Shown here one piece after another: positions 536 through 54,994 of a stretch of DNA of 64,000 nucleotides (the first letter of the stretch is position 1; each line of letters begins with the position of its first letter). Both the position numbers and the translations under genes were made by a program. The DNA is from Mytilus trossulus (Eukaryota): NCBI RefSeq assembly GCF_036588685.1, contig NC_086382.1:56358001-56422000 (forward strand), given 5' to 3'. The notes below the pieces were generated by a model. The model was given only the letters and a program-made list of their open reading frames with translations, ran no database searches and had not been told where the DNA came from.

Positions 536-713
536 AAATATTATTATACCATAGAAATACACGATATAGAATACATAATATAGCAAAAGAACAAATATAT
601 AAAAAAATAAAAAAATATGTAAGTTGAAAACTTATTTTTTTGTAAGTCTATTCTATGGTGCATATCTTCGTGTGTATGAAAAGAAAAAAGAAAAACTCAG
701 AGGAACTACTTAC

Positions 714-1201
714 ATATCTAGTGGTGAATAACCAGCTGGTTTATCACAGATCCAGCTCCTGTGTGGCAGACACTGGTCATACAAATACTTGTAGTTAGTA
801 CATACATCCATGGGTACGCCCGACACATAGGCAATGATGGCACAAGTCAGTAGTAGTTTTAACTAAAAAAAATATAATGATTATTTTTTATGCTGACTTT
901 TTCAGAAAGACATTTTAGATTTGTATGCCAATTGATCCTATTGCGGTTTAAACAGTAAAATTTGTGAAATACATGTACGGTATAAGGTTTGAATTAAGAA
1001 ATGATAATAATAAAAAACAAAAGCACTTTTGAAGAATTAGCACAAAAAGCGTTTTTGAAATAATAAATGTAACAGTTCTACCTAAACAGAGGGATTTATT
1101 ATTTATCAATTATTCAAAACTTTGTAAGATTTGATATTTTAATGGAAAACAATCTTTGAAATAAATGAATTCAAATATAACGAATTTCATTGACTTACCA
1201 T
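714..1201 (-). CDS. B0: 5' part of a divergent B-type secreted Cys-rich protein; remaining exons lie left of the window
   Basis: The coding part of exon 1 is only ATG (1201-1199), followed by gtaagt. Exon 2 is 862-714 (ttttag…gtaagt). Translation M|LKLLLTCAIIAYVSGVPMDVCTNYKYLYDQCLPHRSWICDKPAGYSPLD is a signal peptide plus the CxxYxxLYxQCLPxxxWICDK motif shared with B1-B4. Intron phases 0 and 2 match B1-B4. Confidence 0.85.
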
Positions 1202-1492
1202 TTTTAGCAGTGGTCACTTTAAGCAAATTTAAGACGTTTTGATATAAATGGTCAAGTGTAGTCTTTATATAGCATAAAGGTTGACAAATGGTGTCTTTCA
1301 TTTGACAATGATGATGAATTAGCTTACGTACATCACGGACAATGGCCATACTGACGTAGGTCCTTAGGTCAAACTATAACATACTGGTCAGCGATTGGTC
1401 AGTATGTATATATCCTTGTCGCCTAGATTTGTGTATATATAGAAACAAGATACTGGTGGTAAGCAGAACCTAGAAGAGACACAAGAAATAAG
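1202..1492. promoter_or_regulatory. Bidirectional promoter and 5'UTRs of the B0/A0 pair
   Basis: TATATAAAG on the minus strand (1271-1263), TTACGTA (1324), TGACGTA (1352), GCGATTGG CCAAT box (1391-1398), TATATATA on the plus strand (1434-1441), and a non-coding A0 exon ending at the donor AAG|gtaaac (1492/1493). Confidence 0.7.
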
Positions 1493-1741
1493 GTAAACTA
1501 TTCTATTCTACTTCATTTTCGACAAAGGCCAAACATTATAAAGAGTTTCAAAAAAGAGATTTATACGTTTTACTTTATCGCTTCAACTAGGGATTTAATG
1601 CAAAATTGCTTTATCAAATCAGGTTAAATATTGCACAATATAGTTAAGCAAAATAAGCCCTTTAAATTTCTAACCCACGGCTTCAGATTGCCGTCAAATC
1701 AACGTTTCATATATAAATAATGTGTTCATTATTGTTTTTAG

Positions 1742-3468
1742 ATGAAACATAGTCTATTTTTCCTTGCTGTATTACCATGTGTGTTTGGAATATTTGGAAA
1801 GAAATGTGTTGTTGATCCGATAGAAAACAGATGGCCGGACATGGGAAAGATATGTCATGATCCGTTAGAATATAATCAGTAAGTATACATTTTTAAAAAG
1901 TTGTTTATATTGTAAAATGCACGAATTCAAAATTCTACGCAAAAATCTCTAAATCGTTGCAGTTGGATATTGTCTATTCAAATTGCACTATTATTATCAA
2001 ACGGTCGTAATTTTAAGAAAAGTAAGAGATGTATTATGCTTATATGCCGAATACACTTCAAACACATAAGCACAATAATTGAACGAAACAAAACTATTTT
2101 TTTCTTATATAAGCTCGGAATATTATCTTGTCTTTTTGTTATATAGCACAGTGAATAAATGCCCTTTTTCTCTTTATTCAGTATTGCTATAGAACAGGCT
2201 ATAATAGATGATCCAGAAATCCAGATATATTTACAAGATGCCAGTAGAATATACCAACCAGCTGTTCCTTATGATGACCCTCAGTAAGTATATACCTATT
2301 CAATTTTGCATACTGTCAGATTTTTTTAAAACATAATAATTTTCATAGAGTGGTAAACCAAATGACAAATTAATATTCTGCATCCAGATTTTCAGCATAC
2401 CCTTTAGTGTTAAATCTTGAAAAAAGCAATAGATAGCGTCGAAAAACTATATATAAATGTTCACAAAAAATAGTTTGAGTCAGTAAAAAAACAACAATGA
2501 ATTAATAGATAACTGTAGTACCCTTTTTAGCAATGCTACATTTATACATCTCATACATGAATGATAAATTGATAACTTTTTGTCTTTTTAGTATCTGCCC
2601 CCTTGATATTGGAAATCCCAGTGGACCACAGATTGTAGAATGTGGCAGTATATGTCCCAGCTCTTACACTAACCTTACAACAGTTTGGTATGAGTACGAA
2701 CCAGGAAGGACAACCATGTGTAACGTTATGAGACCATGGCAGCAAATTGTTTATTATATGCAATGCGGGTAAGTGTACTATGAATGACACATTTTTGTTT
2801 AGGGGCAAGCAGATGCAGTCTCCGGGTGCTGGTTTGTTTTGTTGCATTGAAGACCCATTGGTGGCCTTTGGCTTTTTTTGCTCTTTGATTGTGTTGTTGT
2901 CTCTTTCATATATTCCCCATTTCCATTCTCAATTTAATTTACAAAATAAGTAAGGAAATACCAATGATTAAAGCAAATAAGTTTTAATACAACGACATTA
3001 CTATACATGACAGGCAAAGGTATAAATATGATGCAATAAAAATTGATATGCTAAAATATTCAGAAATTTTAAATTTAATGTGTTAGCTAAAACCTTTCTT
3101 GCAAATCTAAAAAAAAAAAATTTTTTTTAGTATAAATAATCTCTATGTCTAGAAATCTGATGTATAACAGAGTTCTTCGCAACAATGCATTTATATACAA
3201 TATTCACTTCCAGACAATAATTATATTTCTATTTCATTTTAGAACCAAATATCCACTGGTTGATGGTATGGATAACTCGTTCCAATGTGTACCAGAAGAT
3301 ATCATCAGACGTAAAATAGCTGTGTATTGTCCGAATATTGTACCACAATGTAGAAAAATGGATATTGATTTACCACAACACTGTGCTGCCAGCAAATTTC
3401 AATGTAGACAGAAAAAGGTTTCACAGCAATCAAAATTGGACAATCTTTTTGCTTCTTTTGGTTGGTAA
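1742..3468 (+). CDS. A0: 213-aa secreted Cys-rich protein with a degenerate Spaetzle-like cystine knot (divergent A-type paralogue)
   Basis: Exons 1742-1878, 2182-2283, 2592-2768 and 3243-3468 are all GT-AG, phase 2, and sum to 642 nt in frame. MKHSLFFLAVLPCVFGIFG signal peptide; …ICPSSYTNLT…CNVMRPWQQIVYYMQC…FQCVPEDIIRRKIAVYCP…LPQHCAASKFQC. AATAAA at ~3592. Confidence 0.9.
2810..2940 (-). repeat. Short interspersed repeat fragment; related copy on the plus strand at ~13198-13337
   Basis: Its reverse complement matches aaattgagaatggaaatggggaat…aaagagacaacaac…ggtcttcaatg at ~13200-13300. Confidence 0.65.
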
Positions 3469-8498: not shown

Positions 8499-11400
8499 TT
8501 AGAGAGGGAATGTATCGTCACATCCAACCTTTACACAACTACATGCTGTTGGGAGCTTCTCGGCATGAAGAGTTATTCTTCCATTATCACTGGGGCATAA
8601 CACTGCCATGGTTCTGGTGACGTAATTGGTTGGTCGGCAGTAATAATCTTTTTGTGGTGCATAATGAAATCTGCATTTTGTTGTTCTCTTATGGCTGTAA
8701 AATTAAAAGTAAGAATACATTAAAGTCAACAAATGAACGTCTTAATGAACATGATTTATATTTTTCTAGGAATATATTAAATGAGATGCATGTTACACCC
8801 AACAGATACAAATACCAAATTATACAAATACCAAATGATACAAATACCAAATGATCAAAATACCAAATGGTACTAAATGGTACTTGTTTACTTATTCTCT
8901 ATTCCTTATTTAGTGGCTTATAATTTTGAAAGACAGCAGCCAAACTCCAAACAAAGCAAACTTTTCTTCTATTTTGTTAGTTAATCATAGATTTCATTTT
9001 TTATAATTGAATGATTTGTATGAGACTAAATATGAACTCACCCTATACACTCCACTTTATTTATAGTTTGGAATCCTTGTTCGGTTAAAACGACCTCACA
9101 AATTTCATTGCCTATTTTTTTACCAGTCATTATTTGGTTAATGGATCTATAAATATGGGTCACAGGTGTGCGCACTTCTCTGCACATAGGAAACTTATGG
9201 ATCTTTGCCACTCTGAAATAAAAACATAGAAATATTTATCTTAATCATTTTGTGACAATGTGACCTTATTTTGATATAGATTCCATCACGGAATAGAAGA
9301 ATATTTTAAGACATATTAACAGATGGTTAAGTTTGAATTACTGTGAAATAATACTAGTAGTACTACAAACAGTTGAACGAAGTGATTGTTTTTTTTTTTA
9401 AAAGTACTGTGGATTCATTAATATTCGTTGGATACCAATTTTCGTGGGAACAGGAAAACCACGAATTCAAATGTCCAACGAAAAACAATTTTTTCTAAAG
9501 GAATGAGTGTAGACTTTGCCAAAACCACAAAATGAAATATCTACGAATATGTCAATTTTCCTCAAACCACGAAAATTAGTACCCACGAAAATAAATGAAT
9601 CCACAGTAAATTGATTTAATAATAACAATAATTACAGATTATAGAAAAGAAGATATAAAGTGGAATTATTAGAAGAAACACATTATTTGATCAGAGAAAA
9701 GTGTCTTACGATATATGTCTATCATTTGCTTTGATCTAAATCAAAATTAAAATGCTCATTATCAATATATAGCAAGGTAGAAAAACAAACATAAATTATA
9801 AGGTAAATAGTCTTTTATAGCTGACTATGCGATATGGGCTGTTCATTGTTGAAGGCCGTACGGTGACATATAGTTATTAATGTATGTGTCATTTTGGTCT
9901 CTTGTGGACAGTTGTCTCATTGGTGATCATACCACATCTTCTTTTTTATATATCAATAATAAAGTATAAACTTCTCAATGAGCTTATAATGCCGTACTAT
10001 TCGTTCTTTCTAAAAAAAAAAAAATTTAGTAAGTATTGATTGTATAATAATTCATTTAAAACCAAGCATTAAATGTGTTCAATATTAAAACTATCATCAT
10101 TATTTCTGCAATTTTCTTAAAAAAATAAAATATAAAATAATATGAACTCTATTTTCTGATTGTGAGTATTTATTTCATTCTAAAAACCAACCAGATAGAA
10201 AACATTGAAATGTGTTAATGCAAAAGATTTGTTTCAGCTTCAAATTGAAAAAGAGTTCATCTTTCAAAAACAACTCATTTAATGCTATACATTAAGAATG
10301 AAACAAAGCAAAACAAGCACTCTGACCGTTCCGTCTTAAGACATTTCTGAAGATAACATTATAGAGTCGTCAGTGCTTTCTTGAAATTTTCTATTTATAA
10401 AATTTATTTACCCAGTTCCTCTGAAATCATCTACTGCATTTTGTTTAGAGAATATATGGTTTGAGACACCGTTGCATTCTTTGCTGTGTTTTAAGTAACT
10501 CACAAATTTTATATCTGAGTCTTTCATTGCTTGGCGGCTGTAAGAGAGAGAGAGTTATATTTATATCTCATCAAATAGTCAATCACATCTTTAATTTCAA
10601 GATTGTGCAATAAGCTTTAGCTGTATGTAGAGATACGATGATTTACTTGGTATGAAGCGGTATGATGATTCATTTAGTATACAATGGAAGCATAATTTGA
10701 CTAATCTACTTATTTTCATATTCGTACACAATGAATGTTATGATATATATACAAAATTATGAAATATCAGAGCTAGCGAATGTTATTTTTTAAATTTGTA
10801 TTTGCATTAAGTGAAGCATGTGTGTTAACTCTAATCTTTGATCCTAACTTTTTGCACGTTTTGTTGTAACATATCACCAACCTTATCTCAGAAGTGCTGC
10901 CATTGTATTTTTAATTATTGCACAATCATGGCATTTATTTTGAGTTTACTTATTAATAACATTTTGTATGATAAGAGTACTTACATGTTATATCTAACGT
11001 AGGTTTCTGGGATCTGACTCTTATCACAAATCCATTCCTGTGGTGGGAGACATTGTTTATACAACAAGTCGTATTTCTGACAGAGTTGCCATTTATTACC
11101 CTTATGTGGATCAGGGAGAGCAGTGGCAAGCGTCACAGCTATGACAGCAATATACAGTTGAAGTGGAACCTGAGAGAATATAAATACATGTTTTAAATAA
11201 ATGTCGTACAGCTATCTTTAGTTTTATCTATTTAATGATAAGTGGAATTATATGCGTAAAGATTATCAAGCATTACTACTAATAGTTTTATATATTTAAA
11301 CAAGATAGGCTTTAATATTTTCAAATGAATGAAAAGTCATCATGCTCAAATAAACGAACCACTATAAGTTGAATATATAAAGTTGAAGTGGAACCTGATA

Positions 11401-13675
11401 CAACATACATACATATTTTTTCAAATAAATGTCTTCAGGCTATCTTTTATTTATTCATTTAATGAAAAGCTGTAGTTACAGTGATACACTTATATAAAGA
11501 TTAAAATGCATTACTATTTATATTGTTTATATATTTTAATACTCTTCAATAGAACGAGAAGACATCGTGTCCAAATAAACGAACCACAAAAAGCTAAATA
11601 GTAAAAACAGAGACATATATATATATATAATTATATATAACAAGTCTAAAAGAATACAACATCACCAAAAACACAATAAAACGAACAATATGTTAGATAT
11701 TTCGGATAACAGATATCCTTCTTCGGTAATTGCACGATGAAAAATGAATCATGTCAATTCAAATTAAGACTCTATCAAAATCTTGATTTATACAATTTAA
11801 GCGAACGCTGGAACAATTTTAAAATTTTCAAACACACCGCAAAGACTACAAAAATATGCCAAAAATAAAAAAAGTTATTTACGATGTGAACTGGCACAAC
11901 TCTAAATTCCCAAAGGTGTTGACAGTTGAGATGTTAAACAACTGCGTGGAAATACAGTCCCAATAAACAGTCCTGACCGATCTAAACTGGTATGATATTT
12001 AAAATATGACAACGGTAGGGCAGTTGTATCAGAGACTGCGTATTTAAACATCTAAAAAATATAGTAATTTGATGATAAGAAAATTGAGTAATAAATGTTT
12101 ACTAAGGTTAGGTAATAGAACGTGGCTGCGTACTTATACACATCCTTGCCAACTGTAATCAAAACTTATATAATTCAAAAATTCCTGAAAGTGTAAGGGT
12201 CCAGTACGGAAGCCGTAGTAACTGGCCACAAGTGATGACAGGAAATTAGTGATGGTAGGAAAAATGAGTGACTCTTCTATGTTTTTTCATTAATGCCCTC
12301 TGGGGAACCTGTCCTCAGCTTTCTTATCCAAAAACTTTCCCGAGCAAGTCTGTCGGCCTTTGACCAATCCTCGTTGTGATCTATGATAGTGATGGTGAGT
12401 TTTTTAAGATCAGCTTGGGCATGCCCATGTGATCTTAAATGACGACTTACGGGAAGGTCGGGCTTGCATGTGTAGTCGCTACGATGACCATTCATGCGTT
12501 TGTTGAATGGCTGTTCTGTCTCGCCAACATACTGCATGCCACATCGACACTGAAGAATGTATACAACATTCTGGGTTTTGCAAGTTACATTACAAAATAT
12601 TGTGTACACAGACCCAGTGGAGTGGCAAGTAAATGTTTGAGTATTCACTATTTGTTGGCAAGTCAGACATCGTTTGTTACCACACGACTTGCACCATCCT
12701 GTAGTTGAACAGCTTTTATTAGAGGAGACGGCAGCTTTTACAAATAAGTCTTTTAGACTTGCTGGTCGCCGAAAAGCTAAGACAGGAGGATTTATATATA
12801 TAATTATATATAGAAGTCTATAAAAAGGATTAACCAGCAAATTTACTATGTACCGGATCGTCTAGAATAGACGATAGTATGCAGACAAGGAACAAATAAT
12901 ATCAGTCTAAAAATTTGCACAACGGTACTGATATAAGATGTTATTATACGAAAATATTGTTATTAAATCGTGTAGACAAATATACATTGATATAAGCAGA
13001 TGAGTTATGAGTGCCAATGACACTCACCATCCTAGTCAAATTTTATAAAAGTAAACAATTAAAGGTTAAATTCATGCATATATGTCTCTCGTAATAAAAG
13101 TTGATGATGATAATTGAAAACATTTGTTCGATTCAAAGATTTCTTTAAAATGAAGAAATATTTCCGAAACATTTACCTTGCAAAAGTTTTTTTTTCATAT
13201 AAAATTGAGAATGGAAATGGGGAATGTGTCAAAGAGACAACAACCCGACCAAAATAAAAAAAACACAACAGCAGAAGGTCACCAACAGGTCTTCAATGTA
13301 GCGAGAAATTCCCGCACCCGGAGGCGTCCTTCAGCTAATTTTTTTTTTAACTTCAATGCAATCTTTTTCAAAAAGAAGAAAAACTTTCCGTATTTTAAAA
13401 GGTGTCCACAAATGTTACCTACATATAAGTAGTTCCTGTTATATTTGCCATTCGTAGACTTTGATATATAGGAAAATTTAGAATAGAGTAATGTATTCTG
13501 AATATTTCCCTAACAAAGAATTGTTTATCTAATTAGATAATTTTTGTTTCTTTTCATATTTTCGTTCACAGCAAACATTAACTTAAACTTAAAATATCTT
13601 TTGGAGTGTCCAAACATTTTATATTTTCAGACATAAGTATATCTTTTTGAATTAATTTAGATTACATCTTACCAT
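8499..13675 (-). CDS. B1: 226-aa secreted Spaetzle/neurotrophin-like cystine-knot protein with a complete knot
   Basis: Exons 13675-13673 (ATG), 11169-10985, 10537-10412, 9212-9042 and 8694-8499 are GT-AG, phases 0,2,2,2, and sum to 681 nt in frame. Signal peptide MVPLQLYIAVIAVTLATA. Knot region MCREVRTPV…EIC…QTINKVEC…TTKC…YYCRPTNY…AVLCP…LPTACSCVKVGC. AATAAA at 8370-8365. Confidence 0.9.
9405..9608. mobile_element. ~200-bp MITE (TA-flanked, Tc1/mariner-like) in B1 intron 3; older relatives at ~21193-21365, ~33787-33960 and ~47000-47170
   Basis: Terminal inverted repeats tactgtggattcatt…aatgaatccacagta. Absent from the corresponding B2-B4 intron. Confidence 0.8.
9812..9950 (-). repeat. SINE-like interspersed repeat; relatives at ~12985-13070, ~20350-20557, ~25485-25565, ~60520-60645 and ~61560-61710
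   Basis: Shared core gaagatgtggtatga.t.ccaatgagacaact…tacggccttcaaca. Confidence 0.65.
11686..11733 (-). ncRNA. Penelope pLTR-type minimal hammerhead-like motif
   Basis: Minus strand reads gcaauua-CCGAAGA-a-GGAUA(ucugu)UAUCC-GAAAUAUC^-uaacauauug: 5-bp stem II, palindromic AUAU stem III, core U-to-C variant. Confidence 0.55.
12277..12790 (-). pseudogene. C-terminal Cys-rich linker and GIY-YIG endonuclease of a Penelope-like element (RT missing)
   Basis: PPVLAFRRPASLKDLFV…CKSCGNKRCLTC…NVVYILQCRCGMQYVGET…RMNGHRS…RESFWIRKLRT..PEGINEK. The ORF's N-terminal codons come from flanking DNA. Confidence 0.88.
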
Positions 13676-14096
13676 TGTTATTTCTTGTATCGAATCAAAA
13701 TTAAATCTGATTGATAAACTAGAAAATGTGGATATTTATATGCATAAACGAGGAAATTAACTTCTACGGTTTAGTAACATCGTTTTTTGATTCGTCCTTT
13801 TATTTGTACGTTATACACTGATGTATTACTTAAAAGTCTTAAGGCTATGTTAACAAAATAAAAGTTACGTCACAATACATAATGTTTATCATATACATGC
13901 TTTGATATCTTTACAATTGCAAAATACTCCTTTGTTTTTCTTTTAAAATACATAATTATGGTTTTGACTATTTGACGTAATAGTGTCCTAACGAGCTGCG
14001 ATTGGCTTTAAAATCCTTTTCCTCATGGCACTAGAATACATAAAAGAAACGAAATTTTGAGTATTTAGAAAGTACAGTTGTTCGACAGATATTAAG
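13676..14096. promoter_or_regulatory. Bidirectional promoter B1/A1 (421 bp between ATGs)
   Basis: TATAAATA on the minus strand (~13740-13733), an inverted CRE/ATF-like pair TTACGTCA (13865) and TGACGTAA (13973), GCGATTGG (13998), and CATAAAA on the plus strand (14039). Confidence 0.75.
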
Positions 14097-25979: not shown

Positions 25980-26346
25980 TTTTATTTCTTGTATCGAATC
26001 AAAATTAAATCTGATTTATAAACTAGAAAATACGGATATTTATATGCATAAACGAGGAAATTAACTTCTACGGTTTTGTAACATCGTTATTTGATTCGTC
26101 CTTTTATTTGTACGTTATACACTGATGTATTACTTAAAAGTCTTAAGGCTATGTTAACAAAATAAAAGTTACGTCACAACACATAATTTTTATCATATAC
26201 ATGCTCTATGGTTTTGACTATTTGACGTAATAGTGTCCTAACGAGCTGCGATTGGCTTTAAAATCCCTTTCCTCATGGCACTAGAATACATAAAAGAAAC
26301 GAAATTTTGAGTATTTAGAAAGAACAGTTGTTCGACAGATATTAAG
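25980..26346. promoter_or_regulatory. Bidirectional promoter B2/A2 (367 bp)
   Basis: Same motifs as unit 1, with an ~54-bp deletion between the two CRE-like sites. Confidence 0.72.
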
Positions 26347-38300: not shown

Positions 38301-39109
38301 ATCATGCTCAAATAAACGAACCACTACTAGTTGAATATATAAAGTTGAAGTGGAACCTGATAGAAAATAAATACATATTTTCTAAATAAATGTCTTTAGG
38401 CTATCTTTTATTTAGTAATTCAATAAACAGTTTTGGTTACAGTGATACAATTATTTGAAGATTAACATGCAATACTATTTATATTGTTTATATATTCAAA
38501 TCCCATTTTCTTAAATATCTTCAATAGAACAAGAAGACATCGTGTCCAAATAAACGAACCACAAGTAGCGAAATAGTAAAAACAGAGACACTTATATATA
38601 TTTATATATACACAGGTATAAGCAGATGAGGTATGAGTGCCAATGACACTCACCATTCTAGTCAAAATTTATAAAAGTAAACAACTAAAGGTTATATACA
38701 TGCATTTATGTCTCTTGTAATAAAAGTTGATGATCATAATTAAAACATTCGTTTGATACAAAGATTTCTTTAAAATGAAGAAATTTTCCGAAACATTTAT
38801 CTTACAAAAGTTTTTTTTTATATAAAAAAAAATGTTTTTAATTTCACTGCGATCTTTTTCAAAAAGTAGAAAAAACTTGTTCACAAAAGTTACCTAAATA
38901 TAAGTAGTTCCTGTAATATTTACCATTTGAAGACTTTGATATATAGGTAAATTCAGAATAGAGTTATGTATACAGAATATTTCCCTAACAAAATATAGTT
39001 TTTTCCAAATAGAACATTTTAATACTTAGAGTATCTTTTGAGGTGTTCAAACATTTTCATCTAATTATAAGTATATCTTTTTACATTAATTTAGATTACA
39101 TCTTACCAT
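35392..39109 (-). CDS. B3: 232-aa Spaetzle-like cystine-knot protein
   Basis: Exons 39109-39107, 38125-37944, 37449-37324, 36818-36639 and 35599-35392; intact. Confidence 0.9.
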
Positions 39110-39476
39110 TGTTATTTCTTGTATCGAATCAAAATTAAATCTGATTTATAAACTAGAAAATACGGATATTTATATGCATAAACGAGGAAATTAACCTCTA
39201 CGGTTTTGTAACATCGTTATTTGATTCGTCCTTTTATTTGTACGTTATACACTGATGTATTACTTAAAAGTCTTAAGGCTATGTTAACAAAATAAAAGTT
39301 ACGTCACAACACATAATTTTTATCATATACATGCTCTATGGTTTTGACTATTTGACGTAATAGTGTCCTAACGAGCTGCGATTGGCTTTAAAATCCTTTT
39401 CCTCATGGCACTAGAATACATAAAAGAAACGAAATTTTGAGTATTTAGAAAGAACAGTTGTTCGACAGATATTAAG
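39110..39476. promoter_or_regulatory. Bidirectional promoter B3/A3 (367 bp)
   Basis: Same short form as unit 2. Confidence 0.72.
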
Positions 39477-41843
39477 ATGGTAAGAGAAGTATTCTTTAAT
39501 TAATGATATTTTAGTTTAGTAAAGCTGCATACACTATTATATTGTAAGTTAACACATTTTATATAAAAATCATTTTTAGATGATTGGTAATATAAAAGTA
39601 AAGTATAGCACTGTAATATTTAACATTGGTTCTTTTATATCAAGACATTTTATTTACAAATGTGAATGAAATCGTGTTATAACAATTGTAAACTTATCTT
39701 TTATCTAGATGACTATGTTTATTGTTTGGTTTGCGGTACTAGGAGTCACTGGAGCTTACAAGTGTATGGATCCTCCAGAAATGCATTGGCCTGATAAGGT
39801 CAGAATATGTGATGGAGAATTTGGAAGTAGTCCTGGATGTAATGATGAATATACAGTCCCGTATAACCAGTAGGTACATCCTTGAGCCAGAAATATTCTA
39901 GACACATTACAAGTATTATTAAACTTCCTAACTTAAAAAATTGAAAATTGCACTTGAATGATTTTCAACAGATTTTATGAATTAAAACTGTGTATGTATT
40001 TAGCAGCAGTCGATTTCTAATTTATATGACTATCCGAATATTAGATTTTTACATCAATTTCGTAAAGGTTTGTTGTCTAATTGCTTGTAATAAAGAATTT
40101 GCTCAACTCTATATTTTATTAATCGCTTCGTATGGATTTTATTTTCATTTGTATCTATTTTTCAGCTATCATATAGAAAGCGCCCTTCAAGCTGACAGAG
40201 ATCTTCTATCCTTCGTTGAGGATTCTTGTAAAATATACTCTCCAGAACTTCCCCTTGAATATGAGTAAGTTTTGATTAATATCTATCAGTAATTATAATG
40301 ACATTCGCCAAAATCGAAGGGCTATATGTTGTAACGAGGTTGTGTGTTACTTGTTGTTATCTGAATGTTCCAAATTCCTCAAAAAGGATAACCAACTTTC
40401 TTAATAGATATAACAAATCATCAATGAAATAATATTTATCAATTTCATCCTTCCGAATCGATCACCTTGCTTTATTTTCTTCAAGAGCGCCTAAACACAA
40501 AATATTGAAAAACCAAAAATGTATAGATAAATGAAAAAGTTATGAGCTATGTCACTATAATGGACATTAAACGAATGTTTTATACATTGATAAATATAAT
40601 TAAGATGTATTCTCATTAGATATTTTATTAAAACACAGTCATATCATTTATGACCACTTTTGTATTACTACAAAGTAATAGCATTCATCAACAATATGAT
40701 ATTACAACACAGTCAGAACATTTATCAACACTTTTTTTTACTACAAGTCATCCACACTGTGTTATTACCACACAGAGACGTCATGACAATCGTTCTCACC
40801 GTGTGGTTTCAATACAATCATCAAATCTTTTCATAACGTCTTATGACATCAAAGTTCTAAATTTTAACAGCATTTTATTATTACAAGAAAGTTACAACAT
40901 TTAATCGCAACGTGTGATATTTCAACAAAGTCAAATATATGGTTATGAAATTACCTGGACGGCTAGAAATCATAAGAAACATATAGTCTATTATTTTTCT
41001 ATTCCGTACAAATTTATATGATTCCCCCCCTTTTTAGACAATGTCCAATTGATGGTGGTGATCTTGGAAAAACGCTAGGCAGATGTGAGAAAGTTTGTGA
41101 TGGCAATTATGTTAATGTAACAGCTGTGAATGTGCAAATGGTAGACGAAAAAACAAAAAGCTTAAGATGGAGCAAATGTTATGTTATACGTCCATGGGAA
41201 CAGAAAGTTTACTATATGAAGTGCAAGTAAGTAGTTATATCACTCAAAGCTGTTTTTTCTAATGAACTTTTTTCAATTTTCAATTATTATTATCATTGAA
41301 GTAGAGGTGGTATCAAAAAGTCAAATATATCACTCAAAGCTGTTTTTTCTAATGAACTTTTTTCAATTTTCAATTATTATTATCATTGAAGTAGAGGTGG
41401 TATCAAAAAGTCAAATATGTTCACATGTATTGATTGTGATACTTCGTTTAATATCTTATCAACCTTTCTTCTCTATTTATTTTTCAAGTTTACTAATTGG
41501 TAAATGATGAGGTTCAGGCTCATCTTCTTAAATACTTTATTATGTTTGATGGAAATTGAAGATTACAGGCTTCTTTATCTAAATCAAAAAATTAGTTATT
41601 TGATTTTTTTTTAATTTCAGAAGTGATCGACCTACTTTTGAGAGCAGTTCATTTAAGTGTGTTCCAGACAACTTTATCAGACGTAGGGTTGCTGTTTTCT
41701 GTCCAGAATTCAAAGAACACCAATGTCAAAAAGTGGACCTCGAATTACCAACTAATTGTGCTGCAAGCCGATTTGAATGTGTCCAACCGAAGAAAACAAA
41801 GCAACAAAGCGTAGACAGCTTTTTCGATTCATTGTTTTTGTAG
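39477..41843 (+). CDS. A3: 224-aa degenerate-knot protein
   Basis: Exons 39477-39479, 39709-39869, 40166-40264, 41038-41226 and 41621-41843; intact, with F-to-L in KSLRW. Confidence 0.92.
41236..41415. repeat. 90-bp tandem duplication private to A3 intron 4
   Basis: 41236-41325 is repeated at 41326-41415; single copy in A1, A2 and A4. Confidence 0.9.
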
Positions 41844-48600: not shown

Positions 48601-51600
48601 TTATAGAATTCTTTTTGTTGTGAATGTATCGTCACATCCAACCTTTACACAACTACATGCTGTTGGGATCTTCTCGGCATGGAGAGTTATTCTTCCATTG
48701 TCACTAGGACATAACACTGCCATGGTTCTGGTGACGTAATTGGTTGGTCGGCAGTAATAATCTTTTTGTGGGGCATAATGGAATCTACATTTTGTTGTTC
48801 TCTTATGGCTGTAAAATTAAAAGTAAGAACAAATTAAGTTAACATAAATATGATATTTTTTTGCTGGAATTACGTTAAATGAGATGCAGGCTACACTCCA
48901 ATGATACAAATAACCCAAGGTATATAATGAAAGTGAAGTCTTCAACGCTAGACATATGTGATGGGCGGCTTTCATTTCCATAGTTTTTATTTTTTGGTAA
49001 TTCCCCTCCCCCATTTTCAATTGTGTTTCCTCATTATTCTCTATTCCTTATTTTTTTTGACTATTTTTCTTTTCTTTTTTCACCGATTTTCTGCATTTTT
49101 TGTCCTTTATCCTCTATCCTGTAAAACCCACCCAGACTTAATGTGTCTCATACATTTACGATGGGGTAAAACAATACATGTAGATTAGAAAAAAACACAG
49201 ACTGATTACTAGCTGTAAGGGACAAGATCGGAAAGTATGGGAAGAGAGAGATCGTTAATAATTCGTTAAAAAAGATATCGGGGACTGTCGAAAGTAATAG
49301 ACAATACAACAGACATTACCAACCACTTCCATCCGACACCTATTGATAAAGTACAATAGACAAACAACAAGGAATAGGGTTGATATAGACTAACATGAAA
49401 CTGGTCCACTATTGTTGGGCCATCGCAGTTCAACATGCGCAAATATGTATGTTTTAGAATATGAAATTTAGAAACTCATTAACTGGACCAACACACACAT
49501 TACAATCTAGGGATTACCACAAATATGAATCATTAGGATCAGTAACACGTACATAGTCACGTTTGGACTCTATATCAGTTTAGCCTTACTACAGTAGCAT
49601 GTCTTTTTTCTTGGATTTGGTGCCATTTGATTCAGAAATATTTAACGTTTTTTCTCTCTCATTTTCTGTATTCAATCGTTCATTATGAAAACATGAATAA
49701 GATGAAGTGTTACTTATACTTAAGAAAGACATCCACCAAATTCTAAACAAAACTTTCTTCTATTTTTACATTATTTTTGGTTGATCTTAGTGTTAATTGT
49801 TTTATAACTAAATGATATGTTTGAGACTAAAAATTAACTCACCCTATACACTCCACTTTATAAATTGTTTGGACTCCTTGTTCGCTTAAAACGACTTCAC
49901 AAATTTCATCCCCCAGTTTTTTACCAGTCATTATTTGGTTGATGGATCTATAAATATGGGTCACAGGTGTGCGCACTTCTCTGCACATAGGAAATTTATG
50001 GATCTTTGCCATTTTCGTCATTCTGAAATAAAAACATGGTTATATTTATCTAAATCATTTTGTTCTAATGCAGTTTTTATCACGAAATAGAAGAATATTG
50101 TAAGACATGTTAACAGATGGTAAAGTTTAAATAACTGTGAAATGTTACTAGTAGTACTGCAAACAGCATTAATTCGATATAAAATGTGTTCAAAATTAAA
50201 AATAGCATCATTATCTCTGCAATATTCTAAAAAAAGAAATAATTAAAAGAATCTGAGCTCTATTTTGTGATTGTGAGTATTTATTTCCTACAAAAGAACC
50301 AACCAGATAGAAAACATTGAAATGTGTTTATGTAAAAGATTAGTATCAGCTCCAAATTGAACAAGAGTTCAACTTTCAAAAAACAACTCATTTAGGTGCT
50401 ATGGGTTTAGAATGAAACAAAAAGAAATAATATGCACTCTGACCGTTCCGTGTAAAGACATTTCTGAAGAAACCATTTTAAAATTGCAGTGGTGACTTAA
50501 AATTTTCTATTTTTAAAATGTATTTACCCAGTTCCTCTGACATCCTCTACTGCATTTTGTTTAGAGAATATGTGTTTTGAGACACCATCGCATTCTTTGC
50601 TGTGTTTTAAGTAATTCACAAAACTTCCATCTGAGTCTGTCATTGCTTGACGGCTGTAAGAGAGAGTTTTATTTAAATCTCATCAAATATCAATCACATC
50701 TTTAATGTCAAGGCTGTTCAATAAGCTTTTACTGTATGTAGAGATAAGATGTTTTAATTGGTATGAGGCAGTAAGATGATTTATTTAGTATTAAATGGAA
50801 GCATAATTTGCCTCATCTACTTATATTTATATTAAAACACAATGACTGCTATGCTATACAAAATGATGAAATATCGGAGCTAGCGATTGTTTTTTTTTTT
50901 TTAATTTGTATTTGTTTTTGTCTTAAGTGAAGCGTGTGTGTGAATTCTGATCCTTGATCTTTACGTTTTGCACTTTTTGTTGTAACATATCACCAAAGTT
51001 TTAATGGACTTTAGGTAAACCTCAACGATTACCTCGAGAATCTCATTTATTTTCTCAGAAGTGCTCTCATTATATTTTTAATTATTGCATAATCATGGCA
51101 TCTATGATGAGTTTATTTATTAATAACATTTTGAATGATAAGAGTACTTACATGTTATATCTAACGTAGTTTTCTGGGACCTTACTCTTATCACATATCC
51201 ATTCCTGTGGTGGTAGACATTGTCTATACAACAAGTCGTATTTCTGACAGAGCTGAAATTTCTTACTCATCGGATTAGGGAGAGCAGTTGCAAGCGTCAC
51301 AGCTATGACAGCAATGTACAGTTGAAGTGGAATCTGAGAAAAAATCAACACATGTTTTAAATGAATGTCGTACAGCTATCTTTGGTTTCATCTATTTAAT
51401 GATAAGTTTTGGTCACAGGAATAATATGCGTAAAGATTATCAAGCATTACTACTAATACTTTTATATATGTAAACAAGCTATTAATATTTTCAAATAAAT
51501 GAAAATACATCATGCTCAAATAAACGAACCACTACTAGTTGAATATATAAAGTTGAAGTGGAACCTGATAGAAAATAAATACATATTTTCTAAATAAATG

Positions 51601-52303
51601 TCTTTAGGCTATCTTTTATTTATTAATTCAATAAACAGTTTTGGTTACAGTGATACAATTATTTGAAGATTAACATGCAATACTATCTATATTGTTTATA
51701 TATTCAAATCCTTTATTCTTTAATATTTTCAATAGAACAAGAAGACATCGTGTCCAAATAAACGAACCACAAGTAGCGAAATAGTAAAAACAGAGACACT
51801 TATATATATTTATATATACATAGGTATAAGCAGATGAGGTATAAGTGCCAATGACACTCACCATTCTAGTCAAAATTTATAAAAGTAAACAACTAAAGGT
51901 TATATACATGCATTTATGTCTCTTGTAATAAAAGTTGATGATCATAATTAAAACATTCGTTTGATACAAAGATTTCTTTAAAATGAAGAAATTTTCCGAA
52001 ACATTTATCTTACAAAAGTTTTTTTTTCATATAAAAAAACGTTTTAATTTCACTGATCGTTTTCAAAAACTTGTTCACAAAAGTTACCTAAATATAAGTA
52101 GTTCCTGTAATATTTACCATTTAAAGACTTTGATATATAGGTAAATTCAGAATAGAGTTATGTATACAGAATATTTCCCGAACAAAATATAGTTTTTTCC
52201 AAATAGAACATTTTAATACTTAGAGTATCTTTTGCGGTGTTCAAACATTTTCATCTAATTATAAATATATCTTTTTACATTAATTTTGATTACATCTTAC
52301 CAT
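48601..52303 (-). CDS. B4: 232-aa Spaetzle-like cystine-knot protein
   Basis: Exons 52303-52301, 51333-51152, 50653-50528, 50022-49843 and 48808-48601; intact. Confidence 0.9.
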
Positions 52304-52718
52304 TGTTATTTCTAGTATCGAATCAAAATTAAATCTGATTTATAAACTAGAAAATACGGATATTTATATGCATAAACGAGGAAATTAACTTCTACTGTTT
52401 TGTAACATCGTTTTTTGATTCGTCCTTTTATTTGTACGTTATACACTGATGTATTACTTAAAAGTCTTAAGGCTATGTTAACAAAATAAAAGTTACGTCA
52501 CAATACATCATGTTTATCATATACATGCTTTGATATCTTTGCAAAATACTCCTTTGTTTTTCTTTTAAAATACATAATTATGGTTTTGACTATTTGACGT
52601 AATAGTGTCCTAACGAGCTGCGATTGGCTTTAACATCCTTTTCCTCATGGCACTAGAATACATAAAAGAAACGAAATTTTGAGTATTTAGAAAGAACAGT
52701 TGTTCGACAGATATTAAG
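52304..52718. promoter_or_regulatory. Bidirectional promoter B4/A4 (415 bp)
   Basis: Long form, like unit 1. Confidence 0.72.
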
Positions 52719-54994
52719 ATGGTATAAGAAGTATTCTTTAATTAATGATATTTTAGTTTAGTAAAGCTGCATACACTATTATATTGTAAGTTAACACATT
52801 TTATATAAAAATCATTTTTAGATGATTGGTAATATAAAAGTAAAGTATGCACTGTAATATTTAACATTGGTTCTTTTATATCAAGACATTTTATTTACAA
52901 ATGTGAATGAAATCGTGTTATAACAATTGTAAACTTATCTTTTATCTAGATGACTATGTTTATTGTTTGGTTTGCGGTACTAGGAGTCACTGGAGCTTAC
53001 AAGTGTATGGATCCTCCAGAAATGCATTGGCCTGATAAGGTCAGAATATGTGATGGAGAATTTGGAAATAGTCCTGGATGTAATGATGACTATACAGTCC
53101 CGTATAACCAGTAGGTACATCCTTGAGCCAGAAATATTCTAGACACATTACAAGTATTATTAAACTTTCTAACTTGAAAATTTGAAAATTGCACTTGAAT
53201 GATTTTCAACAGATTTTATGAATTAAAACTGTGTATGTATTTAGCAGCAGTCGATTTCTAATTTATATGACTATCCGAATATTAGATTTTTACATCAATT
53301 TCGTAGAGGTTTGTTGTCTAATTGCTTGTAATAAAGAATTTGCTCAACTCTATATTTTATTAATCGCTTCGTATGAATTTTATTTTCATTTGTATCTATT
53401 TTTCAGTAATCATATAGAAAACGCCCTTCAAGCTGACAGAGATCTTCTATCCTTCGTTGAGGATTCTTGTAAAATATACTCTCCAGAACTTCCCCTTGAA
53501 TATGAGTAAGTTTTGATTAATATCTATCAGTAATTATAATGACATTCGCCAAAATCGAAGGGCTATATGTTGTAACGAGGTTGTGTGTTACTTGTTGCTA
53601 TCTGAATGTTCCAAATTCCTCAAAAATGATAACCAACTTTCTAAATAGATATAACAAATCATCAATGAAATAATATTTATCAATTTCATCCTTCCGAATC
53701 GATCACCTTGCTTTATTTTCATCAAGAGCGCCTTAACACAAAATATTGAAAAACCAAAAATGTATAGATAAATGAAAAAGTTATGAGCTATGTCACTATA
53801 ATGGACATTAAACGAATGTTTTATACATTTGATAAATATAATTAAGATGTATTCTCATTAGATATTTTATTAAAACACAGTCATATCATTTATGACCACT
53901 TTTGTATTACTACAAAGTAATAACATTCATCAACAATATGATATAACAACACAGTCAGAACATTTATCAACACTTTTCTTTATTACAAGTCCTTCACAAT
54001 GTGTTATAACAACACAGAGACGTCATGACACTCGTCCACACCGGGTAGTCACAATACAATCATCAAATCGTTTCATAACGTCTTATGACATCAAAGTTCT
54101 AAATTTTAACAGCATTTTATTATTACAAGAAAGTTACAACATTTAATCGCAACGTGTGATATTTCAACAAAGTCATATATATTGTTATGAAATTACCTGG
54201 ACGGCTAGAAATCATAAGAAACATATAGTCTATTATTTTTCCATTCCGTACAAATTTATATGATTCCCCCCTTTTTAGACAATGTCCAATTGATGGTGGT
54301 GATCTTGGAAAAACGCTAGGCAGATGTGAGAAAGTTTGTGATGGCAATTATGTTAATGTAACAGCTGTGAATGTGCAAATGGTAGACGAAAAAACAAAAA
54401 GCTTTAGATGGAGCAAATGTTATGTTATACGTCCATGGGAACAGAAAGTTTACTATATGAAGTGCAAGTAAGTAGTTATATCACTCAAAGCTGTTTTTTC
54501 TAATGAACTTTTTTCAATTTTCAATTATTATTATCATTGAAGTAGAGGTGGTATCAAAAAGTCAAATATGTTCACATGTATTGATTGTGATACTTCGTTT
54601 AATATCTTATCAACCTTTCTTCTCTATTTATTTTTCAAGTTTACTAATTGGTAAATGATGAGGTTCAGGCTCATCTTCTTAAATACTTTATTATGTTTGA
54701 TGGAAATTGAAGATTACAGGCTTCTTTATCTAAAGCAAACAAATAGTTATTTGATTTTTTTTAAATTTCAGAAGTGATCGACCTACTTTTGAGAGCAGTT
54801 CATTTAAGTGTGTTCCTGACAACTTTATCAGACGTAGGGTTGCTGTTTTCTGTCCAGAATTCAAAGAGCACCAATGTCAAAAAGTGGACCTCGAATTACC
54901 AACTAATTGTGCTGCAAGCCGATTTGAATGTGTCCAACCGAAGAAAACAAAGCAACAAAGCGTAGACAGCTTTTTCGATTCATTGTTTTTGTAG
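52719..54994 (+). CDS. A4: 224-aa degenerate-knot protein
   Basis: Exons 52719-52721, 52950-53110, 53407-53505, 54279-54467 and 54772-54994. The first donor is gtataa rather than gtaaga. Confidence 0.88.

What the first reader, a model, noticed from the sequence alone, without database searches (positions are those of the whole stretch)
714..54994. Head-to-head pairs of a complete-knot and a broken-knot Spaetzle-like secreted protein: a candidate two-component ligand system
Seen in the sequence: five times, a minus-strand B gene and a plus-strand A gene face away from each other across a short shared region (367-421 bp between ATGs; 540 bp for B0/A0, including A0's first intron). Both have signal peptides and intron phases 0,2,2,2. 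Their C-termini align: B CRPTNYVTRTMAVLCP…IPTACSCVKVGC versus A CVPDNFIRRRVAVFCP…LPTNCAASRFEC. The arrangement is also present in the much more divergent B0/A0 pair, so it is old. Established knowledge: Spaetzle/NGF-family ligands are dimeric cystine knots with a prodomain, and some cystine-knot hormones (bursicon alpha/beta, GPA2/GPB5) act as heterodimers. Inference: an ancient inverted duplication produced a co-expressed A/B module, either a heterodimer or a ligand plus modulator, possibly acting on Toll-family receptors. I do not know of a description of this system and cannot confirm novelty without a search.
Basis: partly seen in the sequence, partly recalled or inferred. Interest (0 to 1): 0.92.

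Follow-up and report, generated by a model that had tools for sequence, protein, structure and literature searches.

The report
Paired Spaetzle-like cytokine genes in mussel
A mussel chromosome carries repeated back-to-back pairs of two related secreted cystine-knot genes that share one short promoter; one partner has lost a knot disulfide, both are expressed and conserved, and neither is described in the papers searched, so they may give mussels a two-part signalling ligand.

Summary
The window (Mytilus trossulus, C10:56.358-56.422 Mb) holds five divergently transcribed B(-)/A(+) pairs. The gaps between their ATGs are 540, 421, 367, 367 and 415 bp. RNA contigs prove the splice sites of B2 and A2, with intron phases 0,2,2,2. 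All eight type-1 genes in the window are intact.

Genome-wide there are 8 head-to-head pairs and 3 singletons. A and B are separate clades, each with an old (type-0) and a young (type-1) branch, so the pair was copied as a unit. Both are under purifying selection, strongest in the knot domain.

B is a cystine-knot cytokine nearest to Spaetzle/NGF. The evidence is Pfam Spaetzle at 15-20 bits (below the 27-bit cut-off), language-model neighbours that are Spaetzle/NGF, and fold hits that are only cystine-knot growth factors. B has oyster homologues.

A is its paralogue (hhalign E 1.4e-6). It lacks two cysteines that would pair in one ring disulfide of a canonical knot.

The shared promoter keeps a CCAAT box and other motifs between the old and young pairs.

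An A:B complex prediction gave only weak support. Toll binding is untested.

Verdict: real and largely undescribed, a new variant of a known kind. The heterodimer idea is plausible but unproven. Earlier notes of this scan on the same DNA agree.

The parts
714..1201 (-). B0 (type-0 B gene), the part inside the window: exon 1 ends in ATG at 1201-1199; exon 2 is 862-714. Exons 3-5 lie left of the window, to window coordinate -2776.
   Evidence: tblastn with B2 and with the public B0-type protein P0002, plus a splice model. ATG followed by a GT donor.
1202..1741 (.). Shared B0/A0 control region. It includes A0's non-coding exon 1 (ends at 1492) and its first intron. CCAAT-box motif at 1390-1399.
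1742..3468 (+). A0 (type-0 A gene). Coding exons 1742-1878, 2182-2283, 2592-2768, 3243-3468; 213 aa. It keeps the CAAS sequence in place of CxC.
   Evidence: Splice model. 89-96% identical to A8/A9 and to public P0016/P0017.
8499..13675 (-). B1. Exons 13675-13673, 11169-10985, 10537-10412, 9212-9042, 8694-8499.
13676..14096 (.). Shared B1/A1 promoter. CCAAT motif at 13997-14006.
14097..16358 (+). A1. Exons 14097-14099, 14329-14489, 14786-14884, 15643-15831, 16136-16358.
22325..25979 (-). B2, 232 aa. Exons 25979-25977, 24999-24818, 24319-24194, 23692-23513, 22532-22325.
   Evidence: RNA contig joints; translation
25980..26346 (.). Shared B2/A2 bidirectional promoter. TATA-like element facing B at about 26040, CRE-like TTACGTCA at about 26170, CCAAT motif at 26247-26256, and a TATA-like element facing A at about 26290.
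   Evidence: A's exon 1 is covered by an RNA contig from about 26300 (record 20).
26347..28624 (+). A2, 224 aa. Exons 26347-26349, 26579-26739, 27035-27133, 27909-28097, 28402-28624.
   Evidence: RNA contig joints; translation
35392..39109 (-). B3
39110..39476 (.). Shared B3/A3 promoter. CCAAT motif at 39377-39386.
39477..41843 (+). A3
48601..52303 (-). B4
52304..52718 (.). Shared B4/A4 promoter. CCAAT motif at 52619-52628.
52719..54994 (+). A4. Its protein is identical to public P0014, M. trossulus LOC134686388.
58862..61070 (+). A5, an unpaired A copy with a 1-nt deletion in an A-run of exon 4. It is a probable pseudogene, or the deletion is an assembly error.

Best explanation
A and B are paralogous secreted pro-proteins of the cystine-knot cytokine superfamily, closest to Spaetzle/NGF. 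Each has a signal peptide, a faster-evolving pro-region (exons 2-3) and a conserved knot domain (exons 4-5).

An ancient inverted duplication placed them head to head around one compact control region of about 300-400 bp. That region keeps a central CCAAT box, CRE-like sites and two outward-facing TATA-like elements. The pair has since been copied only as a unit, so A and B are made together.

B keeps the full knot plus an unpaired ninth cysteine and is the ligand-like subunit. A has lost one ring disulfide (the fourth knot cysteine, C4, and the second Cys of CxC) and has an even cysteine count. Most likely A acts with B, as a non-covalent heterodimer partner or a modulator of the B ligand, in extracellular signalling, possibly immune and possibly through Toll-like receptors.

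Shown: gene structures, transcription, paralogy, age and unit-wise duplication of the pair, purifying selection, fold class, promoter conservation.
Inferred: co-regulation (about 0.75), physical A:B association (about 0.35), Toll as the receptor (about 0.25).
For: Gene models and expression:
- Spliced RNA contigs of both genes occur in the same four runs. The run richest in B is also richest in A, and the poorest is the same for both. The tool warns that this depth is a poor measure of expression.

Paralogy:
- hhalign of the B alignment against the A alignment gives 90% probability, E 1.4e-6, over 147 columns.
- Intron positions and phases are identical.

Age and unit duplication:
- A and B clades each have 100/100 support, and each has type-0 and type-1 subclades.
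- There are 8 head-to-head pairs, including two at C10:74.53-74.55 Mb.
- Consecutive accession numbers alternate between A and B in M. edulis, M. galloprovincialis and M. coruscus.

Selection:
- dN/dS is 0.06-0.12 for type 0 and 0.13-0.56 for type 1.
- The knot part scores 0.05-0.43 and the pro part 0.05-0.98. The pro part is higher in every type-1 and A0-type comparison; in B0-type pairs both are 0.05-0.08.

Family:
- Pfam Spaetzle is the best hit for type-1 B genes and for three of the five oyster-type homologues; DAN scored higher in two Logan sequences (E 1e-3 to 5e-2).
- UniRef names several B orthologues 'Spaetzle domain-containing protein'.
- The nearest ESM Atlas clusters are Spaetzle/NGF for both B (0.92, 194 shared features) and A (0.91, 189).
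- Foldseek and VIA on the B model return almost only cystine-knot growth factors.
- All nine knot-domain Cys are invariant from mussels to oysters.

Promoter:
- Motifs are conserved between type-0 and type-1 pairs although dS between the types is about 1.9 for A and too saturated to estimate for B.
- WGCGATTGGY occurs 5 times in the window, only in the 5 shared promoters, against 0.16 expected.

Association (complex prediction, B6 110-234 with A6 88-225):
- Verdict: weak support. Score 0.58, best of 3 controls 0.03.
- The runs agree in at least 81% of contacts, and the partner's pLDDT is at least 74.
- The mark was reached by 51 of 78 solved complexes and 2 of 108 mismatched pairs. At 0.60 or under it was reached by only 5 of those 78 solved complexes and by all 4 mismatches that passed.
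Against: - No Pfam family reaches its gathering score (Spaetzle best 20.0 against 27).
- Profile searches of PDB sequences found nothing significant.
- The AlphaFold2 monomer models are poor (pLDDT 44 and 39), so the fold hits are only indicative. The A model gave no significant hit.
- The complex score is in the weak band. Close relatives of a true partner can also pass, so it cannot separate A:B from B:B or A:A.
- B has 9 Cys and A has 10 in the knot part. This fits a covalent B:B dimer better than a covalent A:B dimer.
- Three loci are unpaired (Bm1, A5, A7), so pairing is not obligatory for retention. Of these, A5 looks broken.
- Expression evidence comes from only four runs, chosen because they hold the locus.
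- No A-type gene was found outside mussels.
Confidence: 0.55

Rival explanations
1. A and B are independent ligands. Each forms its own homodimer or acts as a monomer and has its own receptor. The head-to-head layout is a legacy of the inverted duplication, kept only because the two genes share promoter elements that cannot be split. There is co-regulation without physical partnership.
For: - Cystine-knot cytokines of the NGF/Spaetzle type are typically homodimers (established knowledge).
- B's odd cysteine count and A's even count fit B:B covalent dimers and A without an interchain bond.
- Unpaired but intact-looking copies exist (Bm1, A7).
- The complex score is only weak.
Against: - The pairing has been kept through every duplication for a time long enough to saturate synonymous sites.
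- The conserved loss of one disulfide in A suggests a changed role that depends on something else.
- The A:B prediction scored 0.58 against 0.03 for the best control.
Confidence: 0.3
2. A is a decoy or antagonist. It is a knot-less paralogue that binds B or B's receptor without signalling, made from the same promoter to buffer the signal.
For: - A lacks C4 and C8 but retains the other shared cysteines and the CxPxN..R..AV.CP core.
- It is co-transcribed with B.
- Its knot part is under strong purifying selection (0.05-0.3).
Against: There is no direct evidence. Precedents among cystine-knot antagonists (DAN, noggin) keep full knots (established knowledge).
Confidence: 0.1
3. The family is not Spaetzle-like. 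It is a divergent DAN/sclerostin/CTCK-type BMP or Wnt antagonist family.
For: - Pfam DAN (E 0.002-0.06) and Sclerostin (E 0.02-0.07) give marginal hits.
- Sclerostin is the best PDB sequence hit (E 0.21) and the top Foldseek and VIA hit (E 3e-4, Z 5.5).
- The order of the eight cysteines C1..C8 with an extra C2-C6 pair resembles DAN (my knowledge).
Against: - The C3-C4 spacing is 8-12 residues, not the CxGxC ring of DAN/CTCK. It resembles the wider NGF/Spaetzle ring (ring sizes from my knowledge).
- The DAN hits cover only the last 45 profile positions, whereas the Spaetzle hits cover positions 21-95 of 96.
- The nearest ESM Atlas clusters are Spaetzle/NGF, with no DAN cluster listed.
- The model used for the fold search has pLDDT 44.
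Confidence: 0.1
4. B and A are interleukin-17-like cytokines, a family that is expanded in bivalves and that naturally lacks one knot disulfide.
For: - My first impression from the C-terminal ...ACSCV motif.
- IL-17 structures appear low in the fold lists.
- IL-17 is a minority family in some Atlas clusters.
Against: - No Pfam IL17 (PF06083) hit at E up to 10 for any exon or full-length member.
- B has the full set of six knot cysteines.
Confidence: 0.03

Closest known systems
Spaetzle / Drosophila neurotrophins (Pfam PF16077), ligands of Toll receptors
   Same: Secreted pro-protein with a signal peptide, a poorly conserved pro-region and a C-terminal cystine-knot domain of about 110 aa ending in CxC. 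It is the best Pfam match for B in most members. The nearest language-model clusters are Spaetzle/NGF. B has an odd cysteine count, as expected for a disulfide-linked dimer.
   Different: Scores stay below Pfam's threshold. B has two extra conserved cysteines (C2, C6) and a C-terminal C9. No conserved protease site was identified. The genes come as A/B pairs, with one partner lacking a ring disulfide. Receptor unknown.
Paphia undulata Spaetzle homologue (Yu et al. 2015, cited in PMC6915886 and PMC7773633)
   Same: A bivalve protein reported as Spaetzle-like.
   Different: It was described as a single gene. I could not read that paper or compare sequences. PMC7773633 (2020) states that no other non-arthropod homologue had been described, and none in Mytilus.
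Heterodimeric cystine-knot hormones: GPA2/GPB5 (thyrostimulin) and bursicon alpha/beta
   Same: Two distantly related cystine-knot paralogues that act as a heterodimer. GPA2 and GPB5 genes lie in one conserved locus in human, amphioxus and limpet (PMC4079206).
   Different: They belong to a different subfamily (CxGxC ring, LGR receptors). Both subunits keep full knots. No shared bidirectional promoter is reported in what I read. Heterodimerisation of A and B is not shown here.
Interleukin-17 family
   Same: A cystine-knot-like fold that lacks one of the three knot disulfides, as A does. The family is expanded in bivalves (PMC8353272, PMC11087794).
   Different: No IL17 profile match. A's missing pair arose within a family whose other member keeps the full knot.
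DAN / sclerostin / CTCK domains
   Same: Marginal profile hits, and the top fold hits on a low-confidence model. Similar C5..C6..CxC segment (CxPxxY...LxCP...CxC).
   Different: The ring spacing is 8-12 residues instead of CxGxC. Hits cover only the C-terminal third. There is no evidence of BMP/Wnt antagonism.

Membership tests
Spaetzle (Pfam PF16077) | Sequence matches the family profile at or above the curated gathering score (27 bits) | tested here: not met
   B type 1: 14.7-20.0 bits, E 1.1e-3 to 4.8e-2. B last exon alone: 17 bits. Oyster homologues: 16-18 bits. B type 0 and all A: no hit. A six-frame scan of the genome found no locus over the cut-off.
Spaetzle (Pfam PF16077) | C-terminal cystine-knot domain with the six knot cysteines, including a terminal CxC | tested here: met
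   B: nine invariant Cys in the exon 4-5 domain, including C-S-C, conserved from mussels to oysters. For A this is not met: C4 and the second Cys of CxC are absent in all members.
Spaetzle (Pfam PF16077) | Secreted pro-protein: signal peptide plus a pro-domain removed by a serine protease just before the knot domain | tested here: inconclusive
   Hydrophobic N-termini can be read directly. The pro-region evolves faster than the knot. Type-1 B has a conserved E-[DE]-[IF]-R-G 14 residues before C1, at the exon 3/4 border, but type-0 and oyster members lack it. Cleavage is not testable here.
Spaetzle (Pfam PF16077) | Binds and activates a Toll receptor as a dimer | not testable with these tools
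   No receptor test was possible.
Spaetzle/NGF clan by language-model features | Nearest ESM Atlas clusters carry PF16077/PF00243, with 170 or more shared features | tested here: met
   B6 residues 105-234: 0.92/194, 0.90/196, 0.90/191, all Spaetzle/NGF. A6 residues 88-225: 0.91/189 (a mollusc cluster, 15% Spaetzle) and 0.90/188 (Spaetzle/NGF). The tool rates this as a lead, not proof.
Cystine-knot growth-factor fold (superfamily) | Two long beta-hairpins tied by a cystine knot; structural matches to solved members | tested here: inconclusive
   B model has pLDDT 44. Foldseek's best hit is sclerostin (E 3e-4), and its listed hits are all cystine-knot factors. In the VIA wide search the top 30 rows are cystine-knot factors, Z 5.5-3.4, covering residues 111-222. 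A model has pLDDT 39 and no significant hit.
DAN / sclerostin (PF03045, PF05463) | Profile match over the gathering score, and a CxGxC ring motif | tested here: not met
   DAN best 18.6 bits against 22; Sclerostin best 15.3 against 27. The C3-C4 spacing is 8-12 residues, with no CxGxC.
Interleukin-17 (PF06083) | Profile match | tested here: not met
   No hit at E up to 10 in any scan.
Heterodimeric cystine-knot ligands (functional class) | The two paralogous subunits bind each other | tested here: inconclusive
   Complex prediction gave weak support: score 0.58 against a best control of 0.03; contacts agree in at least 81%; partner pLDDT at least 74. The mark was reached by 51 of 78 solved complexes and 2 of 108 mismatched pairs, but at 0.60 or under by only 5 of the 78 and by all 4 mismatches that passed. 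A:A and B:B could not be run.

The most novel reading that the evidence does not exclude
The A/B pair encodes an obligate two-subunit Spaetzle-like cytokine. A full-knot subunit (B) and a knot-less subunit (A) are made in fixed ratio from one bidirectional promoter, and together they form the endogenous ligand of a mollusc Toll-like receptor. This would be the first such ligand system defined outside arthropods, and the first heterodimeric one.
Probability: 0.2. Interest if true: 0.85.

Novelty: new variant of a known kind. Interest (0 to 1): 0.62.

Why it matters
Bivalves have very large Toll-like receptor repertoires, yet it is unsettled whether any of them is activated by an endogenous Spaetzle-type ligand. 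A 2020 mussel immunology paper (PMC7773633) states that outside arthropods a Spaetzle homologue had been described only in one clam.

This locus gives concrete candidates that are expressed and under purifying selection. It also has an unusual layout: two paralogues locked head to head for a very long time, one of them with a conserved missing knot disulfide. That layout turns 'does it act as a two-component ligand?' into a directly testable question by co-expression, co-IP and receptor reporter assays.

The locus is also a clean natural example of a conserved bidirectional promoter that is duplicated together with its two genes.

Tried and rejected
1. IL-17 hypothesis. This was my first guess from the C-terminal motif. 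I rejected it because there was no PF06083 hit.
2. DAN/sclerostin membership. The hits are marginal and cover only the C-terminus, and the CxGxC ring is absent.
3. Profile searches of PDB sequences with the B, A and B-plus-oyster alignments found nothing significant.
4. AlphaFold2 monomers from shallow alignments gave poor models (pLDDT 44 and 39). The fold searches on them are only indicative, and the A model gave nothing significant.
5. A six-frame scan of the whole genome with Pfam Spaetzle found no locus over the cut-off, so no canonical Spaetzle gene was available for comparison.
6. The exhaustive HMMER search with B's last exon found only 6 clusters at E <= 0.001, all B-like. The family is narrow, and A cannot be reached from B with a single sequence.
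Gene order and orientation in other species could therefore not be read from DNA. I used shared contig lengths and consecutive accession numbers instead.
8. Inverted-repeat search of the shared promoter: only the two exon-1/intron-1 junctions mirror each other (19 nt, 84%). In AT-rich DNA that is not convincing on its own.
9. Covalent A-B dimer: cysteine parity (B 9, A 10 in the knot part) does not favour it.

Joined (spliced) window translations were not handed to any search tool. Exons were searched one by one by reference. Full-length work used public protein ids returned by the searches (P0030 = B6, P0018 = A6, P0014 = A4). Spliced models were built only inside local scripts, for the tree, dN/dS and cysteine counts.


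Full report
**What is in the window.**
The 64-kb window is G000:C10:56358001-56422000. The genome is Mytilus trossulus: RefSeq proteins of that species lie on a contig of the same length, and one of them (P0014, LOC134686388) is identical to my A4 model. A self-comparison shows a tandem array with a unit of about 13.2 kb and 93-99% identity between units. The B motif (CRPTNYVTRTMAVLCP...PTACSCVKVGC) occurs four times on the minus strand. The A motif (CVPDNFIRRRVAVFCP...PTNCAASRFEC) occurs five times on the plus strand.

**Gene models and transcription.**
I laid Logan contigs of four public runs on 22475-28474. They showed exon-sized blocks of depth and GT..AG joints, which define both genes.
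- B2 (minus strand): ATG 25979-25977 | 24999-24818 | 24319-24194 | 23692-23513 | 22532-22325.
- A2 (plus strand): ATG 26347-26349 | 26579-26739 | 27035-27133 | 27909-28097 | 28402-28624.

These give proteins of 232 and 224 aa with hydrophobic N-termini. In both genes exon 1 ends exactly with the ATG (phase 0) and the other three introns are phase 2.

Mapping these exons onto the other units shows that B1-B4 and A1-A4 are all open, with canonical splice sites.

In A0 the first intron lies in the 5' UTR, directly before the ATG. It is at the same position as in the young A genes but not within the coding sequence. Only exons 1-2 of B0 are in the window. The rest was recovered from the genome to the left.

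Exon depth exceeds intron depth by one to two orders of magnitude, so the runs behave as RNA, although their records only guess so. Both genes are present in all four runs. The run richest in B (X1) is also richest in A, and the poorest (X4) is poorest for both. The tool warns that contig depth is a poor measure of expression, and the runs were picked because they hold the locus, so this is only consistent with co-expression. One contig carries a variant last-exon start typical of the A6-like paralogue, so other copies are transcribed too (table 5c).

**Extent of the family in the genome.**
Six-frame searches of the whole assembly with the last exons of B2 and A2 found 9 B and 10 A last exons with strong E-values; the next hits were at E > 0.8. 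After fetching the flanks and mapping all exons, the layout is as follows.
- Eight head-to-head pairs: B0/A0 and B1-4/A1-4 in the window; A6(-)/B6(+) 5.6 kb to the right of the window (A6's stop codon lies at window coordinate 69569), in inverted orientation; and two further type-0 pairs (A8/B8, A9/B9) at C10:74.53-74.55 Mb.
- Three unpaired genes: Bm1, A5 and A7.

A5 carries a 1-nt deletion in an A-run of exon 4 relative to A6. It is probably a pseudogene, unless this is an assembly error.

**History.**
I built a maximum-likelihood tree of my 19 models plus 10 public proteins. It separates A from B with 100/100 support. Inside each clade a type-0 group (A0, A8, A9 and M. californianus P0016; B0, B8, B9 with M. 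galloprovincialis P0027 and a transcript from another mytilid, P0002) is set apart from the type-1 group. The A/B split therefore predates the type-0/type-1 split, and the pair has been propagated as a unit.

Between the types, synonymous sites are saturated (dS about 1.9, or not computable). A2 and B2 share 26% identity, A2 and A0 share 40%, and B2 and B0 share 43%.

In other species, A and B proteins sit on the same contigs and have consecutive accession numbers that alternate B, A, B:
- M. edulis: CAG2219279/280/281 and CAG2200443/444/445.
- M. galloprovincialis: VDH92397/398.
- M. coruscus: CAC5402870/871.

**Selection.**
Pairwise Nei-Gojobori dN/dS is 0.06-0.12 among type-0 copies of both genes and 0.13-0.56 among type-1 copies. 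Split by region, the knot part (exons 4-5) has 0.05-0.43 and the pro part (exons 2-3) 0.05-0.98, the pro part being the higher in every type-1 and A0-type comparison. This fits a pro-domain plus a mature ligand. Both A and B are maintained by selection. A is not a decaying copy.

**What the proteins are.**
- *Pfam, exon by exon.* B's last exon gives Spaetzle at E 0.009 (17 bits, profile positions 44-95 of 96) and DAN at E 0.035. A's last exon gives only Sclerostin at E 0.017.
- *Pfam, full length.* Public type-1 B proteins give Spaetzle at 14.7-20.0 bits, covering positions 21-95 of 96. This is below the 27-bit gathering score. Type-0 B and all A give nothing.
- *Database names.* UniRef nevertheless names several B orthologues 'Spaetzle domain-containing protein', while NCBI calls them uncharacterized.
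- *Oyster homologues.* An alignment-based search found homologues of 280 aa in Crassostrea virginica, C. gigas and Saccostrea echinata (E 1e-16 to 1e-18). They give the same marginal Spaetzle and DAN hits and keep all nine cysteines of B's knot part.
- *PDB sequences.* Profile searches of PDB sequences gave nothing significant.
- *Structure.* AlphaFold2 models from these shallow alignments are poor (pLDDT 44 for B6, 39 for A6). Even so, Foldseek hits for the B model are all cystine-knot growth factors: sclerostin at E 3e-4, then VWF CTCK, NT-4, FSH-beta, norrin, VEGF, NGF and IL-17F. An independent VIA search of 48,161 chains puts cystine-knot factors in the top 30 rows, Z 5.5 to 3.4, over residues 111-222. 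The A model gave no significant hit.
- *Language-model features.* The ESM Atlas feature search places the B6 knot part nearest to Spaetzle/NGF clusters (0.92 with 194 shared features, 0.90, 0.90). It places the A6 knot part nearest to a mollusc cluster in which 15% of members carry the Spaetzle family (0.91, 189), followed by Spaetzle/NGF clusters.
- *Ring size.* The C3-C4 spacing is 8-12 residues rather than CxGxC. By my knowledge of ring sizes, this is like NGF/Spaetzle and unlike DAN/CTCK.

I therefore file B as a cystine-knot cytokine that is most like Spaetzle/NGF. It is not a demonstrated member of the Pfam Spaetzle family.

**A is a paralogue with a missing ring disulfide.**
Profile-profile comparison of the B and A alignments gives 90% probability, E 1.4e-6, over 147 columns running from the pro-region to the C-terminus. 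In the exon-wise alignment, A shares B's C1, C2, C3, C5, C6, C7 and C9. It lacks C4 (B's ...TTKC) and C8 (the second Cys of CSC, which in A reads CAAS).

In the canonical knot topology, C4 pairs with C8 (established for cystine-knot factors, not tested here). On that basis A has lost both partners of one ring-forming disulfide. The hhalign alignment places A's single cysteine in this stretch (C3 in the exon-wise alignment) opposite C4 instead, so this assignment rests on the conserved Q-x-[IV]-Y-x-x-x-C motif.

CAAS is invariant in all A sequences, old and young, and in fragments from other mussels. A also has three extra cysteines (QC, GRC, HQC). The knot part holds 9 Cys in every B and 10 in every A.

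**The shared control region.**
I aligned the eight inter-ATG regions. The following are conserved between the old and the young pairs:
- B's ATG plus donor (TTACCAT on the plus strand);
- a TATA-like TTTATAT about 70 nt upstream of B's ATG;
- a CRE-like TTA[CG]GTCA;
- an invariant GCGATTGG (CCAAT box);
- a TATA-like ATA.AAGA.AC on the A side.

The pattern WGCGATTGGY occurs five times in the window, only in the five shared regions, against 0.16 expected. Four of these five are recent copies, so the independent observations are the type-0 and type-1 promoters, plus the three further pairs outside the window (B6/A6, B8/A8, B9/A9), which also carry the motif. RNA contigs reach A's exon 1 from about 26300. 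The untranscribed core between the two start sites is therefore under about 300 bp.

**Do A and B act together?**
The single complex job paired B6 residues 110-234 with A6 residues 88-225 and returned 'weak support'.
- Score 0.58, best of three controls 0.03.
- The runs agree in at least 81% of contacts, and the partner's pLDDT is at least 74.
- The mark was reached by 51 of 78 solved complexes and 2 of 108 mismatched pairs. At 0.60 or under it was reached by only 5 of the 78 solved complexes and by all 4 mismatches that passed.
- The tool adds that close relatives of a true partner also pass. Since A and B are paralogues of a family that usually dimerises, this cannot separate A:B from B:B.

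Cysteine parity (9 against 10) fits a covalent B:B dimer better than a covalent A:B dimer. A non-covalent heterodimer, as in neurotrophins or glycoprotein hormones, remains possible.

The strongest argument for a functional partnership is evolutionary. The pair has stayed together through every duplication over a long time, and both members are under purifying selection. I put physical association at about 0.35 and co-regulation at about 0.75.

**Known or new.**
Full-text searches for Spaetzle or Spatzle with Mytilus, bivalves, oysters or molluscs found no description of this family or of paired Spaetzle-like genes. PMC7773633 (2020) states that outside arthropods a Spaetzle homologue had been described only in the clam Paphia undulata (the reference is given in PMC6915886). 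PMC3788107 raises, as an open question, an endogenous ligand for oyster TLRs. A precedent for linked paralogous subunits of a cystine-knot heterodimer is the GPA2/GPB5 locus (PMC4079206).

B-type proteins are already flagged automatically in UniRef. The new elements are the A family, its conserved knot defect, and the conserved head-to-head module with its shared promoter.

Earlier first-reader notes of this scan on the same DNA say the same things: s1-820611, s1-823621 and s1-824028. I tested their claims independently here.

**Limits.**
- Only one reads call, one complex job and two structure jobs were available.
- Joined spliced translations of the window were not given to any search tool. 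Exons were searched by reference, and public protein ids were used for full-length work.

Noticed in passing
window 30473-31496 and 32138-32530 (repeated in each unit): The roughly 6.8-kb spacer between the tail of each A gene and the tail of the next B gene holds short ORFs with reverse-transcriptase-like motifs (..LLFADD..LIGKS..LHRLLDI..). These look like fragments of a non-LTR retroelement carried along with every unit. They may explain the higher GC content there.
   Followed up: no
G000:C10:74526001-74556000 (loci L032-L034): A second locus 18 Mb away holds two more type-0 head-to-head pairs (A8/B8 and A9/B9). All four genes are intact and under strong purifying selection.
   Followed up: yes
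window coordinates -7829 to -5276 (locus L027): An unpaired B gene (Bm1, plus strand; public P0035, LOC134686378) lies tail to tail with B0. It is the most diverged type-1 B (72% identity to B2), with dN/dS 0.4-0.9.
   Followed up: partly
window 58862-61070: A5 has no B partner, and exon 4 carries a 1-nt deletion in an A-run. Its M. galloprovincialis orthologue (P0020) is intact.
   Followed up: partly
window 25475-25674 (B2 intron 1) and 25207-25251: All four RNA-like runs show depth at 25475-25674, inside B's first intron, with one contig that 'goes back 51'. This could be a transcribed repeat or an unannotated exon. A 45-nt partial copy of the exon-2 acceptor region lies at 25207-25251 in every unit.
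   Followed up: no
public proteins P0001, P0015, P0034 (M. edulis): Some annotated orthologues lack a whole exon (P0001 lacks exon 4, P0015 lacks exon 3) or read through into an intron. These are either annotation errors or exon-skipping isoforms, and the exon-4-less form would lack half of the knot.
   Followed up: no
public fragments P0023 and P0077 (ENA/JGI metagenome contigs): An A0-type last exon and a B0-type exon 4 from an unnamed source both lie on a contig of 440,987 bp. This is probably host DNA of another mussel in a metagenome, and it suggests linkage of A and B outside the genus Mytilus.
   Followed up: no
window 54-539: A tandem repeat, seen as self-matches offset by about 57-85 bp at 82-83% identity, lies inside B0's second intron.
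   Followed up: no
public protein P0005 (ENA, 105 aa): This is the last exon of a relative from an unknown organism. It combines B's C4 and CSC with A's extra cysteine in the C6-C7 loop (..VQC..), so it may be an intermediate or ancestral state of the A/B family.
   Followed up: no
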